IMG/VR virus record: IMGVR_UViG_3300042515_001753
Span: 1 to 64,000 of that record
DNA: 64,000 nucleotides
Reading direction: 5' to 3' (one strand)
Position numbers and translations under genes: made by a program
In this document: one piece after another, positions 55,425 through 63,454 of the stretch
Layout: each line of letters starts with the position of its first letter
Numbering within the stretch: position 1 is the first letter of the stretch
The notes under the pieces: model-generated
Seen by the model: only the letters and a program-made list of their open reading frames with translations
Database searches by the model: none
What the model was told of the DNA's origin: nothing

Positions 55425-55834
55425 CAAATGTCTCCATCTTCACGATTTTCACTATAGTATGCGTCAAAAAATCCGTCTGGATAACGCTTCATCAGTTTAT
55501 CAATATTAGTCTGAATTACTTCATCAAAAGAGACATCAAGAGCAATACACGCTTGTGCCACATACCACATCGTATCACCCAGTTCCTTAATCAAGTGAGT
55601 ACGGGTCTCATCATTCCAAGACTTACCTTGAAAGACCATTTTCTTGACTATTTCTAAAAACTCACCACCCTCGGCATTAATTCCCACAGAGGCAGTCAGA
55701 AGACGCTCAATATTAGCACCTTTCTCATCCAACTGAACCATACGGTCAGAAAGAGCAAGGAAATCTTTGGATGCATCAGAAGTTACGGCATCTACGAAGT
55801 TCTGATACTTATTAAAATCAACTCGTTGTGTCAT
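55424..55834 (-). CDS. mazG: MazG-like nucleotide pyrophosphohydrolase
   Basis: AEGGEFLEIVKK, KELGDTMWY, NIDKLMKRYP. Confidence 0.92.
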   Translation of the reverse strand: MTQRVDFNKYQNFVDAVTSDASKDFLALSDRMVQLDEKGANIERLLTASVGINAEGGEFLEIVKKMVFQGKSWNDETRTHLIKELGDTMWYVAQACIALDVSFDEVIQTNIDKLMKRYPDGFFDAYYSENREDGDI

Positions 55835-57003
55835 GAAAATTTAAATCCCTCAAATGATTTTTTTGGTTTATTTTCTTCATTATTATACTCCTCTTCTTTA
55901 CCGCTGTCAAGTATGTCGTTTTGTGCGGACTGTTCTACATCATAAAGTCTCATTTTGGCACGGTCAATTCCAACAACGAAACGCTTAAAGATTGTTGGGT
56001 CATTATATCTGTTTTTAAGTTGCTTCACCATAATCTGCCCTAGACCTTCTAATTCCTCGGTACTAATCAGAGCAAACATAAGGTCGGCAGTAGCAGGAAG
56101 ACCGAACGATTCAGAAGTATCGGTCAATTCTACATCGGAAGAACCAAAACCGCTCCTAGTCGTCTGTGTCGCACTCATAATAGGAACATTAAACTCTACT
56201 GCCAAACCACGAAGTTCTTCGGCAATAGACTTAACCAAAGTATAAGAATTGATATTACTACCACTCTTAAATCGTGAGGAGGAGCAAATATTCAAATAGT
56301 CAATAAAGATAATATCAGGTCTAAATGATTTCTTCAGAGCAAGTTCATTCAGAAGTGCCTTGAAGTGCCCGGAGTGTGCCGAAGCAGTAGGATATTCTTT
56401 GATTACCAAAGAACCCCGAGTCTTCTTGGAAATACCATTTACTTTATTCTCAAATGCTGAGCGTGGTAAATCAATCAGTTGTTGAATTGGAACATTAAGA
56501 AGATTCGCATCAATTCTTTCGGCAATTCTTTCTTCTGCCATTTCAAGAGTAATATAAAGAACATTTCTATTCTGTAGTAAGGCAGAACTGGCAACGTGAC
56601 ACATAAAGAGAGATTTTCCAACTCCAGTATTGTGAGAGGAAACTCCATTAGTGTAATATCTATGATTTGGATGATTTACATTAATATCTACAATAGGTAT
56701 TTGTTTATTGTTTTTATAAACCCGACCAATTTTAATACCCTCGTTAGTAATCAATTTGTATATTAAGTTAGATTGTTCCATTTCTTTAGCGGAAATCCAA
56801 CCTTCAGTAGTTTCAAACAAATGGGACTCATTACAACTAACTTTATTACCCCCCATCATAAGCAATTCATATTCTTCATACATCCCCTTATTAATAAAAA
56901 AATTAACAGGAACATATCCATCGGGAGAATCAACCTCCACTTCATATCCATTATCAAGTAATGTTTTGATTTCAGCAATCGATGTTTCTTTTTCAATCCA
57001 CAT
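55831..57003 (-). CDS. 41: gp41 helicase C-terminal half preceded by split-intein IntC
   Basis: 125-aa Hint region ending SSHN, then TGVGKS, ITLEMAEE, IDYLNI, SATQTTR, KNRY. Confidence 0.95.
   Translation of the reverse strand: MWIEKETSIAEIKTLLDNGYEVEVDSPDGYVPVNFFINKGMYEEYELLMMGGNKVSCNESHLFETTEGWISAKEMEQSNLIYKLITNEGIKIGRVYKNNKQIPIVDINVNHPNHRYYTNGVSSHNTGVGKSLFMCHVASSALLQNRNVLYITLEMAEERIAERIDANLLNVPIQQLIDLPRSAFENKVNGISKKTRGSLVIKEYPTASAHSGHFKALLNELALKKSFRPDIIFIDYLNICSSSRFKSGSNINSYTLVKSIAEELRGLAVEFNVPIMSATQTTRSGFGSSDVELTDTSESFGLPATADLMFALISTEELEGLGQIMVKQLKNRYNDPTIFKRFVVGIDRAKMRLYDVEQSAQNDILDSGKEEEYNNEENKPKKSFEGFKFS
56629..57003 (-). mobile_element. Split intein C-fragment (125 aa)
   Basis: Block B CNESH, block F VDINV..HRYYTNG, terminal HN followed by Thr. 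Confidence 0.93.
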
Positions 57004-57035
57004 TTTGTATAAATACCATTAGCAGGGACAGGGAA

Positions 57036-57704
57036 ATGTTTAATCAAATCTATTCTAACTTATGTGAAGGCAATAAGTCAAGAAAAGAAAACTATAAAAA
57101 ATATTCTGGGTTACACGAACATCATATTATTCCCAAACATATGGGGGGAAGTGATGAAGATTTTAATCTAACATATTTAAATGTTAGAGAACATATATTG
57201 GCACATTATTTGTTGTGGAAGATATATAAAAATCCAAATGATTTAAGGTCTATGAAAATGTTGGGAGCAAACTTATCTCCACAATATAGAAAAATAACAG
57301 GAGAATTTTGTCGTGACAATAATATTGGTATTTTTTCCATTCCATCAAATGAAAGAAAAAAATGGACAATAAAAGGAATAGAAAGTCAAAAACAAGATTA
57401 CTTAACAAATCAAACAAAAAATTTTTACTATTGGAGCACCGAAGAGGGAAGAAAAGAAAGGGCATCTCTTGGAGGAAAGAAGATGGGGTCAAAAGAATTT
57501 AGTTATTGGGCATCTAATGAAGGAAGAAAAACACGATCATCATTAGGGGGAAAGGCGCATAAAGGAAAAAAGGTAATGCATTTGCCCGGAACAAAGGGAT
57601 GGAAAAGAATATCACCAGAAGAAGTTGATATAAAACTAAATGAAGGTTGGAAGTTTGGAACTGGAGAACCAGCACCAAACTCCAAAATCAAGAAATCTTC
57701 CTAA
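57036..57704 (+). CDS. HNH homing endonuclease, inverted between the gp41 halves
   Basis: HEHHIIPKHMGG..NLTYLNVREHILAHYLL; late promoter TATAAATA 57008-57015. Confidence 0.9.
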   Translation: MFNQIYSNLCEGNKSRKENYKKYSGLHEHHIIPKHMGGSDEDFNLTYLNVREHILAHYLLWKIYKNPNDLRSMKMLGANLSPQYRKITGEFCRDNNIGIFSIPSNERKKWTIKGIESQKQDYLTNQTKNFYYWSTEEGRKERASLGGKKMGSKEFSYWASNEGRKTRSSLGGKAHKGKKVMHLPGTKGWKRISPEEVDIKLNEGWKFGTGEPAPNSKIKKSS

Positions 57705-58320
57705 ATCTAATTTTAACTATAGTTTCTGGATGAACGCAACCGGCAAGAGCAATATTCAGAGTCTTATTAGGTAATCCACCTTTTGTGATTTTGTTGAAAT
57801 ATTCTAGGTCAAATTCAATCTTATCTTCTTTACGATGATAAAACTCATATCGTTCCTCATAATTCTGAAGATAATCGTGACCTATATTATTATCAAAAGA
57901 TACTGCCAAGGCATCGGAAAGAATACTGGGAATGGCATCTCTACCTTTTTTATCATCCTTACCATCGGCAATATGAATGGACTCCATGAGTGCCAAGTAA
58001 ATAGCACGGTCACGGCACCACTTTTCGGTAGTATCCAGTATCCACTGCTTATCCACAGGACTATCATTAAGTTTAGAAAGTAATTCTACTATTTCCTTAT
58101 TTTCAGATTCTGTCAAATCTCTACGATTATCAATCTCAATATTGAGTGCTTCTATTGTAATTGAAGAACCATACTTAACGATGAACTCAACAATTTCCTC
58201 AAAAACTATCTTTTCTACTCTTTGCTCATAGTACTCCGGTTGAATAAAAGGAATAACCTTTCTGGCATAGTCTTCATTAAATACTAAGTTTCTAAGGATT
58301 GTAAGTTCAAGTCGTTCCAT
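57688..58320 (-). CDS. 41: gp41 helicase N-terminal half with split-intein IntN
   Basis: TEKWCRDRAIY, SFDNNIGHDY, TKGGLPNKTLNIALAG. Confidence 0.95.
   Translation of the reverse strand: MERLELTILRNLVFNEDYARKVIPFIQPEYYEQRVEKIVFEEIVEFIVKYGSSITIEALNIEIDNRRDLTESENKEIVELLSKLNDSPVDKQWILDTTEKWCRDRAIYLALMESIHIADGKDDKKGRDAIPSILSDALAVSFDNNIGHDYLQNYEERYEFYHRKEDKIEFDLEYFNKITKGGLPNKTLNIALAGCVHPETIVKIRFRKIS
57691..57738 (-). mobile_element. Split intein N-fragment (16 aa)
   Basis: CVHPETIVKIRFRKIS-stop directly after IALAG. Confidence 0.9.
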
Positions 58321-58874: not shown

Positions 58875-59899
58875 ACACCATAACTAAACTCACCCTTGGC
58901 AATCACATCAAGTTTTTCCATTACTTCTGGTGTAAAATATTTTTCGGTATTTTTTAAGATTTCTTTGGCATAAAGTTTCTTACCATCAATCTCATAACGA
59001 CCTGCTACATTCTTCCAGAGTCCACCAATCTCACCAAGTTCAAGAAGACCGTAGTAACGATCAAGACCGCGCTCATCATAATACAGACGGATTTCAACAT
59101 CTTGATTCTCCTTACTTAAACGTGATTTGTGAGTCTTTGCCCTGATAATGTTTCCAATTACTTCCGTTCCATCTTTTTCTTTTGACTTAGAAAGATAGAT
59201 AATTGTAGACGCTGCATATTGCAATCCAGAACCACCAGACATTTGTTTACCACCATAAAGAGACATCGACTCATAGGTGTGATTTGTCACTAGCATAGGA
59301 ATCTTTGCCTGTCCCAATTTGAGAGTCAGCATACGGAAGGCACCTTTGATAAGTTGTGCCTTCGTCATATCACGAGTATCCTTCTCTGCCAGAGCATCAT
59401 TAATTTCTTTGTTGGTAGAAAGCATTCCCAGAGAATCTAATACAAAGATACAAGGGTTTCTTTCATCCTCTTTTTTCTTTAGGTAAATATCAACTGCCTT
59501 GAGTGTTTTGGTACGAAACTCTTCTACCGTAACTACATTGACAACCACCAGACGACTTGTGTCAACTCCCCTACTTTCCAGAAGGGATTTTGTGATTGCT
59601 GCTTCAGTATCAAAATACAGACAATATCCAGTAGGATTATTATCAAGGAAATTTTTAACGACGGCAAGACTGAAGAAAGTTTTTCCAGTAGAAGTTTCAC
59701 CAGCGATTGCAGTAATCTTATTCCCAGATACACCACCAAATATACTGCCGGATACAAGAGCATTAAAAATGTACGAACCCGTATCCACATAAGTTTCAGT
59801 TTCATCAATATCCGAAGCGAGTTGAGTGTATTCTCCACCAATCTCCTTCACTATGTCACGCAAAAAATTTAATCCAGAATCTGCCATTTTTCTACCCAT
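58871..59899 (-). CDS. uvsX: RecA-like recombinase
   Basis: AGETSTGKT, YFDTE, LDSLG, GGSGLQYAAS. Confidence 0.95.
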   Translation of the reverse strand: MGRKMADSGLNFLRDIVKEIGGEYTQLASDIDETETYVDTGSYIFNALVSGSIFGGVSGNKITAIAGETSTGKTFFSLAVVKNFLDNNPTGYCLYFDTEAAITKSLLESRGVDTSRLVVVNVVTVEEFRTKTLKAVDIYLKKKEDERNPCIFVLDSLGMLSTNKEINDALAEKDTRDMTKAQLIKGAFRMLTLKLGQAKIPMLVTNHTYESMSLYGGKQMSGGSGLQYAASTIIYLSKSKEKDGTEVIGNIIRAKTHKSRLSKENQDVEIRLYYDERGLDRYYGLLELGEIGGLWKNVAGRYEIDGKKLYAKEILKNTEKYFTPEVMEKLDVIAKGEFSYGV

Positions 59900-59932
59900 T
59901 TTTAATGATTATACTACAAAAACCACTTCAAG

Positions 59933-60721
59933 TCAACTTTGTTGAGGAACAGCACGATAACCTTTATGTGATTTCGTATTCCTTTTATAATTAAGAAGAT
60001 TCCAAGTAGTTCCAACATCTAAATTATTTTCTTTACAAAATTTAGTAATATTTTTCCCACAAATAATTTCACCCTGAGGATTTATAATTGAAAATTCTTT
60101 ACTTTTCTTCTCCACTATTTTATTTACAATTTCAATATCTCGTTTCTTTCCATAAAGATAATGCTTTTCCCCACTTCTTGCTTCACTCCATTTTTTCTTG
60201 GTTTCTTCTGTGTGAATTCTGCCTTTATTTGCTTCACTTATTTTTAACTTAGATTCTTCACTATGAATTTTTCCTTTCCAAGAATCTAATAATTTATTTC
60301 TATGTTCTTGAGTTAAGGGTATTCCATATTTTGGATGATTTTCTCCACTTTTAGATATACTCATTTTATTTCTAGTTTCCTCAGTCATAACATATGGTTT
60401 TTTACCTTTCTTTGATTCGGACATTCTAATTCTTGCGATTCCATAAAGATGAGAATTATAATATCTACCTTTTGATTTCATTAAAATATGAGCGTGAATC
60501 ATTTTAGTAGTTTTTTTATCCTTAATTCCACACCTCTTAATATAAATCTTTTCCAATAAAGCGTGAGCGATATAATGTTCCCTTGATGTTAGAACTACAA
60601 TCCTTTTATTATTTCCAAAGATACTTTTTGGAAATGTATGATGCTTTTCTGTATAACCTTCAGGTGGAGTTCTGTTCTCTACTTTCCTGATAAGATTGCA
60701 ATAATGCTTTAGATAGTTCAT
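59933..60721 (-). CDS. HNH homing endonuclease with NUMOD3 repeats
   Basis: EKHHTFPKS..LTSREHYIAHALL; repeated HSEESK/HTEETK, GENHPKYG. Confidence 0.9.
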   Translation of the reverse strand: MNYLKHYCNLIRKVENRTPPEGYTEKHHTFPKSIFGNNKRIVVLTSREHYIAHALLEKIYIKRCGIKDKKTTKMIHAHILMKSKGRYYNSHLYGIARIRMSESKKGKKPYVMTEETRNKMSISKSGENHPKYGIPLTQEHRNKLLDSWKGKIHSEESKLKISEANKGRIHTEETKKKWSEARSGEKHYLYGKKRDIEIVNKIVEKKSKEFSIINPQGEIICGKNITKFCKENNLDVGTTWNLLNYKRNTKSHKGYRAVPQQS

Positions 60722-60731
60722 TTATATTCTA

Positions 60732-60823
60732 TTGAGAGTGCATTACTATTTATAATAGAAAAGGTGCCCTGAAGCACCTAATCTTCCTGTGAAATTGCAC
60801 TCTCAACAGGTGTAGTTATTTAT
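60732..60823 (-). promoter_or_regulatory. Tandem late promoters, terminator and 11-nt inverted repeat upstream of the HNH gene
   Basis: ATAAATA 60817-60823, hairpin 60762-60779 + T, TATAAATA 60747-60754, TTGAGAGTGCA/TGCACTCTCAA. Confidence 0.7.
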
Positions 60824-60953
60824 CTTCCTGTTTTTGTTTATTGAGATAATTCATTTTATAAGACCAAAGTTTTTGATAAAGAGCAGTATCTCCACCAATC
60901 CTCATAGCACTAATAATAGTATTCAGTTCTTTTTCGTTAATAGGTAAATTCAT
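60816..60953 (-). CDS. Small hypothetical protein (45 aa)
   Basis: MNLPINEKELNTIISAMRIGGDTALYQKL; TGATG coupling to gp43. Confidence 0.65.
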   Translation of the reverse strand: MNLPINEKELNTIISAMRIGGDTALYQKLWSYKMNYLNKQKQEDK

Positions 60954-63454
60954 CAGGTAAAAAATGAATCAAGATTTGTTGTATGTTCGGTTTTCCATCC
61001 AATCGAATCCAAAATAGACTTGAGTGGGTCTAAGAAACTCTTCTCAAATTGTAGTTCATAATCAATATATTTGTCAAGTCCCAATTCCTTTGGAAATTCG
61101 GAGATGAAGGAAATAACATTCTCTTGTATAATATTGGGTTTTTTTAAGAAAATATACTTAACTTTCTCACCATTATTAATAAGTGAATATTTGTTAGTAA
61201 GTTTTTTCTCTTTTATATAATGATTGAAGAGAAGTGCTCCACGAACATGAATTGGAGTTTTGGATGCGTAAATATTTGATGATGAATAATATTTACGGAC
61301 ATCAGATGCCGTTCGGGGAAAAGCAATTTGCTCTGGTGGAAGAGATTTAAATTCTTGGAGGCACTCATCAATAAATCGAATCACCTCATCTTCAGTTCCA
61401 CTCATCATAATCTTCAGACCATCTTTAATCATCTTGCGGCAAGGTGCCGGAGTTGAAGACTTGACTGCCTCAATACCCATCATCTTCAATTTAGGTTCGG
61501 TGTATCGCACACCTTCACTATCCCAAACATTCAGAATGTAACGCTTCTTGGCAGTCCAAATTCCACGGTCGGCAATATTCTCCCGTTTCATTTGCATCTT
61601 TTGATCGTATGCGTTTACATAGTCCGCCAGTTCTTGGTAGCAACCTTCAATATACTTTTCAAGTTCCACCTTACAGATCTTATCAAGGAACGAAACAACG
61701 CTTTCAGTAGTTTTCTCTCTTCCCTGGTATACAGTTTCAACCAAAGGACCCATATTGAGATAAATGGAGTCAGTATCAGAAGCAATAACATAATCAACAC
61801 TCTTAGTTTTAAGAACTTTGTTTAGATAAGAGTTCATCTTCTCTTCAATCCAACGAATGGCAACCTGACCCGAAAGAGTAATTGCCTCAGCATTTGCTAG
61901 TTTGAAATAACGGAAATACTGATTCCCAATAGCACCATAAGCAGAGTTAAGAGAAATCTTTTTTGCCATTTGGATGTTATTACATCTTGCAATTTCTTTC
62001 TCAAGTTCTTTTGATTTTTTCTTCTCATACTGTTTTTTTGCCTCAATCATCTTCTCCTTATATACAACACGATCATTATACATTTTCTCCATTAGTTCTG
62101 GAAGAAAACCACGAATGTCCTTACGGTACATAGCACCATTAGGGCAAACTGCATAATCCTTATACATATCAAAAGTAAGTTCCTGATTGAGAATTTTATC
62201 CACGGTTACACTAGGATGCCTTTCTTCAACAAGTGTTTCGGGACTTACATTAAATTGCATAATCAAATGTGGATAAAGACTGTTTAAGTCAAAATTAACC
62301 ACCCAATCATACTTTCCAGGAATTGGTTCTTTTACATAAGCTCCAGCATACTTGGAATCTTTATCAGTTTTTTCTTTCGGAGGAATTACAATATTCCTCT
62401 GCTTAAGATAATTATAGATAATCGTATCCCACATTCTTACCTGAGAAAACACATCCTCATAGTTTACCTTACCATCATATGCCATAGTCAAGGCAAGTTC
62501 AATCAGTTTCATCTTGTCTTCCAAACGGTCAACAAGTTCTACGTCAACGATGTTGTATTCTACAAACTTCTGCCAACCTTTAGTATAGAAGTCCTTAAAA
62601 GTATCAAACTCAGAGTGATCCAGTTTTTTCTGATTGAGTTCTACGCTGGCAATATGATCTAGACGATAAGATTCCTGCGCTTTATAAGTGAATTTCTTAT
62701 AAAGTTTAATGTAATCTAATTGACTAATACCACCAATATCATAGGAAATGTGCTTTCTTCCAGATATGTAAACTTCATCCTCAGTCACAAGACCCCAGGG
62801 TGACATACGCTTCATCAATTTCTCACCCAAAACTCTATCCAGGCGACGAACGAGATAGGGAATATCATAAAGTTCACTGTTCCAACCAGTAATAACCTCT
62901 GGAGTATTATCCTCAATCATCCACCAGTGAATAAAATCATTTAATAGACTATACTCATCAGAGAATCCTCGGTAAGAAACATTTGATTGATTATTATCAA
63001 ACTTACCCAATCCCCAAGTACGAATTTGTTTCGTATTATAGTCTTGAAGTGTAATGAGTAGTACTTCTTCTGCCGCATTTTCCACATCAGGAAATCCATT
63101 TTCGGATGCAACCTCAATGTCAATTGTGGTAAGTTTAATTTTACTAATATCAAACTTAATTTCATTTTCCGGATATTTGTCCGAAATATATTGATAGATG
63201 TACTTGTCGTTTCCGTAAATTTTAAAGTTTTGTACATCAGTATACTTCTTAATAAACTCTCTACAATCCCTTACAGAACCAGGTTGAATAGGTTCTACAT
63301 ATTCTCCCTGAAGTGTCGTATATTTGGTTGTTTTTTTAGACGGAACAAAAAGAGTAGGAGAGAACTTCTCACGGGTCATAAAATGTCTACCATTTTCATA
63401 ACCACGAACCAAGAAGTGGTCCCCAACCATTTGCACGTTTGTATAAAAATTCAT
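60953..63454 (-). CDS. 43: Family B DNA polymerase (T4 gp43)
   Basis: DIEV, DLNSLYP, KISLNSAYG, SDTDS, KKRY. Confidence 0.97.
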   Translation of the reverse strand: MNFYTNVQMVGDHFLVRGYENGRHFMTREKFSPTLFVPSKKTTKYTTLQGEYVEPIQPGSVRDCREFIKKYTDVQNFKIYGNDKYIYQYISDKYPENEIKFDISKIKLTTIDIEVASENGFPDVENAAEEVLLITLQDYNTKQIRTWGLGKFDNNQSNVSYRGFSDEYSLLNDFIHWWMIEDNTPEVITGWNSELYDIPYLVRRLDRVLGEKLMKRMSPWGLVTEDEVYISGRKHISYDIGGISQLDYIKLYKKFTYKAQESYRLDHIASVELNQKKLDHSEFDTFKDFYTKGWQKFVEYNIVDVELVDRLEDKMKLIELALTMAYDGKVNYEDVFSQVRMWDTIIYNYLKQRNIVIPPKEKTDKDSKYAGAYVKEPIPGKYDWVVNFDLNSLYPHLIMQFNVSPETLVEERHPSVTVDKILNQELTFDMYKDYAVCPNGAMYRKDIRGFLPELMEKMYNDRVVYKEKMIEAKKQYEKKKSKELEKEIARCNNIQMAKKISLNSAYGAIGNQYFRYFKLANAEAITLSGQVAIRWIEEKMNSYLNKVLKTKSVDYVIASDTDSIYLNMGPLVETVYQGREKTTESVVSFLDKICKVELEKYIEGCYQELADYVNAYDQKMQMKRENIADRGIWTAKKRYILNVWDSEGVRYTEPKLKMMGIEAVKSSTPAPCRKMIKDGLKIMMSGTEDEVIRFIDECLQEFKSLPPEQIAFPRTASDVRKYYSSSNIYASKTPIHVRGALLFNHYIKEKKLTNKYSLINNGEKVKYIFLKKPNIIQENVISFISEFPKELGLDKYIDYELQFEKSFLDPLKSILDSIGWKTEHTTNLDSFFT

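What the first reader, a model, noticed from the sequence alone, without database searches (positions are those of the whole stretch)
60721..60823. Candidate tandem antisense sRNA controlling a homing endonuclease
Seen: late promoter, ~55-nt unit with hairpin CCTG..CAGG carrying TTGAGAGTGCA, terminator, second late promoter, then a leader starting with the exact complement TGCACTCTCAA 10 nt before the ATG. Inference: either cis pairing on read-through RNA, or a separately transcribed sRNA acting in trans like a type I antitoxin.
Basis: partly seen in the sequence, partly recalled or inferred. Interest (0 to 1): 0.6.

Follow-up and report, generated by a model that had tools for sequence, protein, structure and literature searches.

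The report
Homing-endonuclease control module in cyanophage
The flagged repeat is real: it belongs to a mobile control module that sits in front of homing-endonuclease genes in T4-like cyanophages, where an upstream sequence pairs with the gene's leader RNA so that only transcripts from an internal late promoter can be translated. Whether that upstream piece is also made as a separate small RNA is still open.

Summary
In order, the region holds a late-promoter-like GATAAATA (60824-60817), a hairpin (60810-60786), a terminator (60779-60757), TATAAATA (60754-60747), a 20-nt leader and the ATG (60721) of a Mob-like HNH endonuclease gene. A 14-bp RNA helix (60809-60796 with 60742-60729) ends 7 nt before the ATG.

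The pairing is not chance. In 46 distinct homologous elements it holds in 99.3% of cells, and 9 of 13 pairs show compensatory changes. A wider scan found 103 cassettes with 51 arm types. G-U pairs outnumber A-C mismatches 48 to 2, so the constraint acts on RNA of this strand.

The same module precedes at least five homing-endonuclease families, and 68 of 68 units with the common terminator core are followed by one. The window's phage has four copies.

Best explanation: T4-style gating, as in I-TevI, segB and Aeh1 mobE. The terminator and the anti-leader silence transcripts that enter from upstream, and only mRNA from the internal late promoter is open. Dassa et al. 2009 saw such hairpins in similar metagenomic loci.

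Possibly new: the upstream unit looks like a ~55-nt RNA gene, with an invariant [AC]TAAATA at fixed spacing, a covarying hairpin and a terminator. Trans action is plausible (about 0.3) but untested. The reads tool gave only contigs, so no RNA ends could be seen.

The parts
60817..60824 (-). P1: the upstream late-promoter-like box GATAAATA. Its TAAATA core (60822-60817) forms the first bases of the inserted cassette and supplies the stop codon of the upstream small ORF.
   Evidence: Sequence read. TAAATA is invariant and the preceding base is A or C in 46/46 elements and 68/68 elements. In this genome, ATAAATA and CTAAATA lie 8-45 nt before ORF starts in 54-56% of cases, against 2-6% for G/T-TAAATA. 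The spacing from TAAATA to the 5' arm is 7 nt in 45/46 elements. The empty-site comparison places the left boundary just before TAAATA.
60786..60810 (-). Hairpin 1 (stem CCTGT/ACAGG). Its loop and 5' side carry the anti-leader. The predicted +1 of a P1 transcript is 60811, at the base of this hairpin.
   Evidence: Folding of the unit. All 46 units fold as hairpin 1 plus a terminator hairpin. The 6-pair stem is 93.4% paired and 4 pairs show compensatory changes; slid controls give 15-42%.
60796..60809 (-). 5' arm, the 'anti-leader' (CTGTTGAGAGTGCA).
   Evidence: pair I2. Covariation.
60757..60779 (-). Intrinsic-terminator-like GC hairpin (60779-60762) plus a T-rich tail.
   Evidence: 1 found, 0.2 expected. 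The terminator stem sequence differs between cassette families while pairing is kept.
60747..60754 (-). P2: consensus late promoter TATAAATA, lying between the two arms. The predicted +1 is about 60741.
   Evidence: Nearly invariant in alignment A1. T4 late promoters occupy -13 to -6 (PMC2988020). The cyanophage consensus is NATAAATA (PMC2984593).
60729..60742 (-). 3' arm, in the leader of the endonuclease mRNA (TGCACTCTCAATAG). It ends 7 nt before the ATG.
59933..60721 (-). Free-standing homing endonuclease gene (262 aa): a Mob-like HNH N-terminal part followed by three NUMOD3 repeats.
   Evidence: Pfam NUMOD3, E 3.8e-25. phrog_655 'homing endonuclease', E 1e-32. tblastn to RB16 Mob-like and mobD-type genes at 30-40% identity. 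The gene is absent from this site in S-SM2 and in a related allele seen in metatranscriptome contigs.
59908..59936 (-). Sigma-70-type promoter-like site (TTGACT, 17 nt, TATAAT) at the 3' edge of the cassette, just upstream of uvsX.
   Evidence: 11 of 12 matches. A similar site is found at 26 of 90 distinct cassette 3' ends, against 0 in internal controls and 0.4 in shuffles.
60816..60953 (-). Upstream small conserved ORF (T4-GC179, 45 aa). It is part of the host backbone, not the cassette, and its stop codon is supplied by P1.
   Evidence: phrog_38428.

Best explanation
The region is the 5' control module of a mobile homing-endonuclease cassette, inserted between the gp43/GC179 genes and uvsX of a T4-like cyanophage.

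How it most likely works:
1. Transcripts that enter from upstream mostly stop at the terminator. These come from the early/middle DNA-polymerase operon, or from the P1 box.
2. Transcripts that read through carry both arms. The 14-bp helix (-21 to -8 relative to the AUG) then closes the short leader, so the nuclease is not translated.
3. The consensus late promoter P2 lies between the arms. Its mRNA starts at about the second base of the 3' arm, lacks the 5' arm, has an open 20-nt leader, and is the only translatable form. The nuclease is therefore made late and at a low level.
4. A sigma-70-like promoter at the cassette's 3' edge restarts transcription of uvsX.

What is shown: the sequence anatomy, the thermodynamics, strand-specific covariation of the helix and of hairpin 1, the exclusive link to endonuclease genes, and the insertion boundaries.

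What is inferred: promoter activity, terminator efficiency, the existence of read-through RNA, and the effect on translation.
For: Anatomy and folding:
- Anatomy.
- The read-through RNA's minimum-energy fold contains the 14-bp helix with the terminator nested inside (-38.8 kcal/mol, z -4.66, 0 of 200 shuffles as good).
- The P2 leader alone folds at only -2.6 kcal/mol (z +0.77).
- Across 46 elements, accessibility of -21..+3 is 0.55 in the P2 mRNA and 0.29 in the read-through RNA.

Covariation:
- 13 pairs, 99.3% of cells paired, 9 pairs with compensatory changes, slid controls 36-49%.
- 583 Watson-Crick, 48 G-U, 2 A-C and 11 other mismatches, with 22 arm types among the 46 elements.
- 103 unique cassettes with 51 arm types.

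Association with endonuclease genes:
- The module precedes HNH genes and several GIY-YIG-type families.
- 68 of 68 units with the common terminator core are followed by such an ORF.
- Upstream genes are almost always co-oriented.
- An RNA-library contig spans 60664-60893 across the terminator (record 11).

Insertion:
- The site is empty in S-SM2 and in a related allele.

Precedent:
- I-TevI/II/III, segB and Aeh1 mobE use a hairpin that sequesters the ribosome-binding site, with a late promoter inside it (PMC2988022, section 12).
- Dassa et al. found hairpins containing TATAAATA upstream of endonuclease ORFs in cyanophage-like loci (PMC2677866, section 14).
Against: - No Shine-Dalgarno sequence is recognisable in the leader, and the helix stops 7 nt before the AUG. 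Occlusion of initiation is therefore inferred, not evident from sequence.
- If the terminator is efficient, as the restart promoter at the 3' edge suggests, few read-through RNAs would exist. That sits oddly with the near-perfect conservation of the pairing.
- The cis model gives no role to P1, to its fixed spacing, or to the covarying hairpin 1, which competes with the long-range helix.
- No transcript ends were observable. The RNA runs were available only as contigs, which may also include DNA carry-over.
Confidence: 0.62

Rival explanations
1. The stretch from P1 through hairpin 1 to the terminator is a small-RNA gene in its own right, predicted at 53 nt here and 49-60 nt in homologues. It would be transcribed late from P1, or released from the 3' end of upstream mRNAs. 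It would pair in trans with the first 13 nt of the P2 mRNA, repressing its translation or changing its stability. Each cassette would carry its own 'address'. This may act alongside the cis effect.
For: - P1 is [AC]TAAATA in 46/46 and 68/68 elements. These are the two heptamers that mark gene starts in this phage.
- The P1-to-hairpin spacing is fixed (7 nt in 45/46) although indels are common elsewhere in the module.
- The predicted +1 falls at the base of hairpin 1, whose stem covaries.
- Every unit folds as two hairpins plus a U tail, a typical small-RNA shape.
- Trans pairing is favourable: cognate duplex -23.3 kcal/mol, with a net gain of -14.2 kcal/mol after opening hairpin 1.
- Non-cognate duplexes have a median of -11.2 kcal/mol.
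- The arms are far more diverse than the equally pairing-constrained terminator stem: 14 arm types against 4 stem variants among 31 elements.
- P1 persists where the cassette follows a tRNA gene, so it is not merely a stop codon for an upstream ORF (L037, L065 and L062).
Against: - No small RNA has been observed.
- All 68 units sit directly upstream of their target, so nothing separates trans from cis action.
- No orphan units were found.
- The test for distinct arms within one genome was underpowered: 0 of 16 pairs shared arms, against 0.57 expected.
- About a third of P1 boxes have C at -12, off the published NATAAATA consensus.
- The simpler T4 precedent needs no trans RNA.
Confidence: 0.3
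2. The inverted repeats act at the DNA level, for example as an invertible promoter switch or a protein-binding palindrome flanking P2.
For: Inverted repeats of 11-14 bp flank a 53-bp segment that holds a promoter.
Against: - Departures from Watson-Crick pairing are strongly strand-asymmetric: 48 G-U against 2 A-C. One position is G-U in 32 and A-U in 14 of the 46 elements. That fits RNA of the coding strand and not a DNA palindrome.
- A second, overlapping RNA hairpin also covaries.
- The segment is very short for inversion.
- None of the neighbouring genes identified here is a recombinase.
Confidence: 0.02
3. The complementarity is a chance feature, or a by-product of insertion such as a target-site duplication, with no function.
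For: In the window alone, an 11-nt perfect inverted repeat arises in 0.3% of shuffles. That is rare but not impossible across a whole genome scan.
Against: 51 different arm pairs keep their complementarity in 103 cassettes, at many insertion sites and in front of several endonuclease families.
Confidence: 0.01

Closest known systems
Late-promoter-in-hairpin translational gating of T-even homing endonucleases (I-TevI, I-TevII, I-TevIII, segB, Aeh1 mobE; also T4 e, soc, 49). Source: PMC2988022, section 12.
   Same: The endonuclease gene is embedded in a co-oriented early/middle transcription unit. An RNA helix closes the initiation region on long transcripts. A TATAAATA late promoter lies inside the helix, so late transcripts lack the 5' arm. 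For mobE there are several layers of control.
   Different: - Here the loop of the helix holds a full intrinsic terminator.
- The 5' arm is itself presented in a conserved local hairpin.
- A second, invariant late-promoter-like box sits 5 nt before that hairpin.
- No Shine-Dalgarno sequence is sequestered.
- The whole module is a portable unit shared by at least five endonuclease families, with 51 arm variants.
Hairpins upstream of free-standing endonucleases in 'fractured gene' loci of cyanophage-like metagenomic DNA (Dassa et al. 2009; PMC2677866, section 14).
   Same: The source is likewise cyanophage-like environmental DNA, and both have an RNA hairpin before the endonuclease start codon. 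Ten of their hairpins contain TATAAATA, and they report two conserved motifs that complement each other. This is probably the same module.
   Different: The main text I read (sections 10-16; figures and supplement not held) mentions neither the internal terminator, nor the upstream promoter-like box, nor hairpin 1, nor a small-RNA reading, nor a covariation analysis. Their endonucleases were GIY-YIG and Vsr-like, not Mob-like HNH.
Same-strand antisense RNAs of temperate phages: P1/P7 c4 RNA acting on the downstream icd/ant ribosome-binding site, and P4 CI RNA. This comparison is recalled from my own knowledge and was not checked in a paper here.
   Same: A small RNA is encoded upstream of its target, on the same strand and in the same transcription unit. 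It pairs with short complementary sequences at the translation start. Specificity is set by a few covarying bases.
   Different: Those RNAs are processed from the operon transcript and control immunity genes. Here the putative RNA would have its own promoter and terminator, its target is a nuclease gene, and trans action is not shown.
CfrI antisense RNA of cyanophage S-PM2 (Millard et al. 2010, as summarised in PMC2984593).
   Same: It is a non-coding RNA linked to a homing-endonuclease gene in a T4-like cyanophage.
   Different: CfrI is about 225 nt long and is transcribed from the opposite strand across the endonuclease gene and psbA. The element here lies on the same strand, upstream, and pairs through a 14-nt segment.
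Type I toxin-antitoxin systems with non-overlapping small RNAs
   Same: A short RNA with limited complementarity to the leader of an mRNA that encodes a potentially harmful protein.
   Different: The target is a 262-aa DNA endonuclease, not a small membrane peptide. The arrangement is tandem and co-oriented, and there is no evidence of post-segregational or abortive function.

Membership tests
T4-type hairpin plus internal late promoter gating of homing endonucleases | An RNA helix that covers the translation initiation region of the endonuclease on long transcripts | tested here: met
   The 14-bp helix spans -21 to -8 and is part of the minimum-energy fold. It is 99.3% paired across 46 elements. 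Caveat: no Shine-Dalgarno motif is visible, and 7 nt before the AUG stay free.
T4-type hairpin plus internal late promoter gating of homing endonucleases | A late promoter placed so that late transcripts lack the 5' arm | tested here: met
   TATAAATA at 60754-60747 lies between the arms, 4 nt (range 3-5) before the 3' arm in all 46 elements. Promoter activity itself was not tested.
T4-type hairpin plus internal late promoter gating of homing endonucleases | The endonuclease lies within a co-oriented upstream transcription unit, so that read-through RNA exists | tested here: inconclusive
   Upstream genes are co-oriented in nearly all loci. One RNA-library contig bridges the terminator. Contigs cannot show strand, ends or RNA origin.
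T4-type hairpin plus internal late promoter gating of homing endonucleases | Translation is delayed to late infection and depends on the hairpin | not testable with these tools
   Needs infection time courses or reporters.
Independently transcribed trans-acting antisense small RNA | Its own promoter | tested here: inconclusive
   [AC]TAAATA is invariant with fixed spacing and matches the gene-start-associated heptamers of this genome. No transcription start data are available.
Independently transcribed trans-acting antisense small RNA | Its own terminator, giving a discrete small RNA | tested here: inconclusive
   A terminator-like hairpin plus T run is present. The predicted length is 49-60 nt. 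No RNA was observed.
Independently transcribed trans-acting antisense small RNA | Complementarity to the target that is maintained by covariation | tested here: met
Independently transcribed trans-acting antisense small RNA | Regulation when the RNA is supplied from a separate molecule | not testable with these tools
   All units sit directly upstream of their target. No orphan or relocated units were found.
Type I toxin-antitoxin | A small (under about 60 aa) hydrophobic toxin as the target | tested here: not met
   The target ORF is a 262-aa HNH/NUMOD3 endonuclease.
Any curated Rfam family | A match at the family's gathering score | tested here: not met
   The only hit in 60500-61000 is STnc420 at 17.4 bits, against a gathering score of 70 (E 1.4).
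Mob-like HNH free-standing homing endonuclease (the protein) | An HNH-type N-terminal domain plus NUMOD DNA-binding repeats, similarity to T-even Mob genes, and presence/absence polymorphism at the site | tested here: met
   NUMOD3 in three copies. phrog_655. RB16 Mob-like and mobD-type hits. The site is empty in S-SM2 and in a related allele. Nuclease activity was not tested, and no solved homologue was found by sequence.

The most novel reading that the evidence does not exclude
Each endonuclease cassette would encode, from its own late promoter P1, a ~55-nt 'address-coded' small RNA. That RNA would pair in trans with the extreme 5' end of the cognate endonuclease mRNA and set a threshold or delay for nuclease synthesis. 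The 51 or more arm variants would then be orthogonal addresses that let four to six or more endonuclease genes coexist in one phage genome without cross-talk. This would be a natural, modular, same-strand small-RNA/target system spread by mobile elements in lytic phages.
Probability: 0.3. Interest if true: 0.8.

Novelty: new variant of a known kind. Interest (0 to 1): 0.55.

Why it matters
Homing endonucleases are selfish nucleases that must be expressed without harming the phage that carries them. This analysis shows that T4-like cyanophages solve the problem with one portable, insulated expression cassette:
- a terminator plus an anti-leader at the front;
- an internal late promoter;
- often a restart promoter at the back.

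The cassette is reused by unrelated endonuclease families and is kept intact by strong RNA-level selection. It extends a mechanism known from a handful of T-even genes to more than a hundred environmental cases, with unusually clean covariation. It also provides a ready structural model for annotating such cassettes.

If the upstream unit proves to be a trans-acting RNA, it would be a rare case of a lytic-phage small RNA with a defined target, and a natural library of orthogonal RNA-RNA pairs.

Tried and rejected
- **RNA evidence.** It showed exact-identity pieces of the endonuclease gene, one contig bridging the terminator, and an endonuclease-free allele. It gave no transcript ends, strand or levels, so it cannot separate cis from trans action.
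- **Rfam.** No family matched.
- **Solved structures.** No match by sequence.
- **Orphan units, or units placed away from their target.** None was seen in about 1.4 Mb of related loci or in three whole records. Every strong hit that I examined is followed by an endonuclease ORF.
- **Within-genome orthogonality of arms.** 0 of 16 pairs shared arms, against 0.57 expected. The test is underpowered and supports nothing.
- **The module in T-even phages.** The RB16 Mob-like gene has only a 23-nt upstream gap and no such module. Among cultured phages, only S-SRM01 carries it.
- **P1 as merely a stop codon for the upstream ORF.** Considered, and judged insufficient. The box persists after tRNA genes. 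Its second stop codon is not invariant. The base at -12 is restricted to A or C.
- **DNA-level inverted repeat (inverton).** Rejected on the G-U against A-C asymmetry.
- **Literature.** The two Gibb and Edgell mobE papers and the supplement of Dassa et al. were not held. I relied on the Edgell review and on the main text of Dassa et al.

Full report
**1. What is in the window**

The window comes from a T4-like cyanomyovirus. The neighbouring genes, all on the minus strand, are:
- DNA polymerase gp43 (63454-60953);
- a small conserved ORF, T4-GC179 (60953-60816);
- a 262-aa ORF (60721-59933);
- uvsX (59899-58871);
- a cupin/2OG-type gene.

The 262-aa ORF is a free-standing homing endonuclease of the Mob-like HNH type. 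It has three NUMOD3 repeats and matches phrog_655 at E 1e-32. It is 30-40% identical to RB16 Mob-like and mobD-type genes of T-even phages.

In Synechococcus phage S-SM2, GC179 abuts uvsX directly. Metatranscriptome contigs of a related phage skip 59854-60829. The 94-nt spacer and the endonuclease gene are therefore an insertion.

**2. Checking the observation**

- GATAAATA at 60824-60817, whose last bases form the stop codon of GC179;
- a hairpin CCTGT/ACAGG at 60810-60786, carrying TTGAGAGTGCA;
- a GC hairpin plus T run at 60779-60757, the only terminator-like site in 59800-61100;
- TATAAATA at 60754-60747;
- a leader in which TGCACTCTCAA lies 10 nt before the ATG at 60721.

The complementarity extends to 14 positions (60809-60796 with 60742-60729), one of them a G-U pair in RNA.

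The exact 11-mer occurs once per strand in the 64 kb window. A perfect inverted repeat of 11 nt or more appears in 10 of 3000 shuffles of the region.

**3. Folding**

- An RNA that spans both arms has the 14-bp long-range helix, with the terminator hairpin nested inside, as its minimum-energy structure (-38.8 kcal/mol, z -4.66).
- The upstream unit alone folds as two hairpins (-22.5 kcal/mol, z -4.42).
- The leader that would start after TATAAATA is essentially unstructured (-2.6 kcal/mol, z +0.77).

**4. Comparative evidence**

I fetched relatives from viral contigs in three ways: by protein search, by a pattern across the leader and start codon, and by a pattern across the terminator and P2.

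In 46 distinct elements (alignment A1) the order of parts is constant. It runs [AC]TAAATA, 5 nt, hairpin 1, terminator hairpin with T run, TATAAATA, 3-5 nt, 3' arm, 7 nt, ATG. The arm sequences, by contrast, differ completely between lineages.

For the long-range helix:
- 99.3% of cells form a standard pair.
- 9 of 13 pairs show changes on both sides.
- Sliding the partner by 1-3 columns drops pairing to 36-49%.
- My own count gives 583 Watson-Crick pairs, 48 G-U, 2 A-C and 11 other mismatches, with 22 arm types.
- A broader scan finds 103 unique cassettes with 51 arm types.

The excess of G-U over A-C shows that the constraint acts on RNA transcribed from this strand, not on a DNA palindrome. 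One position is G-U in 32 and A-U in 14 of the 46 sequences.

Hairpin 1 is also under selection. Its 6 pairs are 93.4% paired, 4 of them with compensatory changes, and slid controls give 15-42%. All 46 units fold as hairpin 1 plus a terminator hairpin.

**5. The module is general and specific to endonuclease genes**

A covariance model of the unit (R1) finds many copies:
- four in the complete 233,886-bp genome of the window's phage;
- at least six in cultured phage S-SRM01;
- up to six within 14 kb of one contig.

The ORFs downstream belong to at least five different endonuclease families. These are the Mob-like HNH family, another HNH type, and several GIY-YIG-type families.

All 68 distinct units that share the common terminator core are followed by such an ORF. 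The same arm type recurs in front of different endonuclease families. The 5' module is therefore an evolutionary unit of its own.

One natural recombinant (L103, first cassette) joins a unit of one type to the leader of another, and its arms do not match.

The cassette sits at many genomic sites, almost always co-oriented with the upstream gene.

**6. Most likely mechanism**

The layout matches the scheme documented for T-even endonucleases. In I-TevI, I-TevII, I-TevIII, segB and Aeh1 mobE, a stable RNA structure sequesters the ribosome-binding site on transcripts from upstream early and middle promoters. A late promoter is placed so that late transcripts cannot form the structure (PMC2988022, section 12).

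Dassa et al. reported hairpins upstream of endonuclease ORFs in cyanophage-like metagenomic loci. Ten of them contain TATAAATA, and two motifs complement each other (PMC2677866, section 14). This is probably the same module.

I therefore favour a layered insulation model:
- the terminator stops most incoming transcription;
- the anti-leader silences whatever reads through;
- P2 gives the only open mRNA.

T4 late promoters occupy -13 to -6 (PMC2988020). On that basis the P2 mRNA should start at about 60741 and have a 20-nt leader.

A sigma-70-like promoter at the cassette's 3' edge (59936-59908) would restart uvsX. Similar sites occur at 26 of 90 distinct cassette 3' ends, against 0 in internal controls and 0.4 in shuffles. 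Here the cassette also supplies a new uvsX N-terminus.

**7. What the cis model leaves unexplained**

- The first box is invariant TAAATA preceded by A or C in 46/46 and 68/68 elements. In this phage, ATAAATA and CTAAATA both lie 8-45 nt before an ORF start in 54-56% of occurrences, against 2-6% for G- or T-TAAATA. The box therefore fits the phage's own promoter-like signal. The published cyanophage consensus is NATAAATA (PMC2984593).
- Its distance to the 5' arm is 7 nt in 45 of 46 elements, although indels are frequent elsewhere in the module. The predicted +1 falls at the base of hairpin 1.
- The box persists where the cassette follows a tRNA gene.
- A P1 transcript ending at the terminator would be 49-60 nt long (53 nt here). 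Its cognate duplex with the P2 leader is -23.3 kcal/mol, with a net gain of -14.2 kcal/mol after hairpin 1 opens. Non-cognate pairs have a median of -11.2 kcal/mol.
- The arms are much more diverse than the terminator stem, which is under the same kind of pairing constraint.

I put it at about 0.3, and it may act in addition to the cis effect.

I could not test it. The RNA runs were available only as contigs. No unit was found away from its target. The within-genome orthogonality test was underpowered.

**8. Comparison with known systems and novelty**

No Rfam family matches. The literature searches I ran returned no description of the internal terminator, the P1 box, hairpin 1 or a small-RNA reading of this module.

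- It works like the T4 hairpin/late-promoter gates, and it meets the sequence-level criteria for that kind.
- It is not a type I toxin-antitoxin system, because the target is a 262-aa nuclease.
- If it acts in trans, the nearest analogues are the same-strand antisense RNAs c4 of P1/P7 and CI of P4 (recalled, not checked here).
- It differs from CfrI of S-PM2, which is a 225-nt RNA from the opposite strand (PMC2984593).

I rate it a new variant of a known kind. The core mechanism is precedented, and the possibly new component is unproven.

Noticed in passing
window 55831-58320: The gp41 primase-helicase gene is in two pieces on the minus strand (58320-57688 and 57003-55831). The first piece ends with a short Cys-initiated segment (CVHPETIVKIR...). 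The second begins with about 125 intein-like residues that end in ...SSHN before TGVGKS, and it carries the DnaB_C domain. This looks like a 'fractured gene' with an atypical split intein that has a very short N-part, of the kind described by Dassa et al. (PMC2677866). A second HNH-like ORF lies between the halves on the opposite strand (56982-57704). That ORF has no copy of the control module.
   Followed up: partly
window 59908-59936 (minus strand): A sigma-70-type promoter-like site (TTGACT, 17 nt, TATAAT; 11 of 12 matches) overlaps the endonuclease stop codon just before uvsX. A similar site is present at 26 of 90 distinct cassette 3' ends, against 0 internal controls. The cassette seems to bring a restart promoter, and here also a new uvsX N-terminus.
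   Followed up: partly
whole genome G000 (146 kb): CTAAATA is as strongly associated with a downstream ORF start (10 of 18) as ATAAATA (25 of 46). GTAAATA and TTAAATA are not (3 of 50 and 1 of 52). This suggests that this phage's late-promoter core is [AC]TAAATA rather than NATAAATA.
   Followed up: partly
G001:C1 145030-145111, 155958-156035 and 159163-159241 (the first is also G000:C1 877-958): The window's phage carries three further cassettes with the same module, each with different arms. All three precede GIY-YIG-type endonuclease ORFs.
   Followed up: yes
L103:304-411: A natural recombinant cassette. Its unit is of the type seen at G001:155958, and it is joined to the leader of a Mob-like HNH gene. 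The arms no longer match: 11 of 14 positions pair, 4 of them G-U, and the duplex is -6.4 kcal/mol against about -23 for matched pairs. It is a ready-made 'broken complementarity' allele.
   Followed up: partly
window 59854-60829, seen in runs X1 and X3: Metatranscriptome contigs of a roughly 90%-identical relative join GC179 to uvsX through 34 other letters. They lack both the module and the endonuclease gene. This is the empty allele of the site.
   Followed up: yes
L129 (14.4 kb): Six copies of the module lie on one strand within 14 kb. Five precede a complete ORF, four of them GIY-YIG-type; the sixth is cut by the locus end. This is a dense endonuclease cluster.
   Followed up: partly
L015, L022, L054, L038; G001:145030: Some cassettes carry a degenerate extra copy of the P2 box (TATAAAC or TATAAAG, then 3-4 nt) just before the consensus TATAAATA.
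   Followed up: no
L026:1370-1510: One 67%-identical homologue of the endonuclease sits directly after the gp43 stop codon. It has only TATAAATA and a leader, with no upstream unit. This is a natural variant that lacks the anti-leader and terminator.
   Followed up: no
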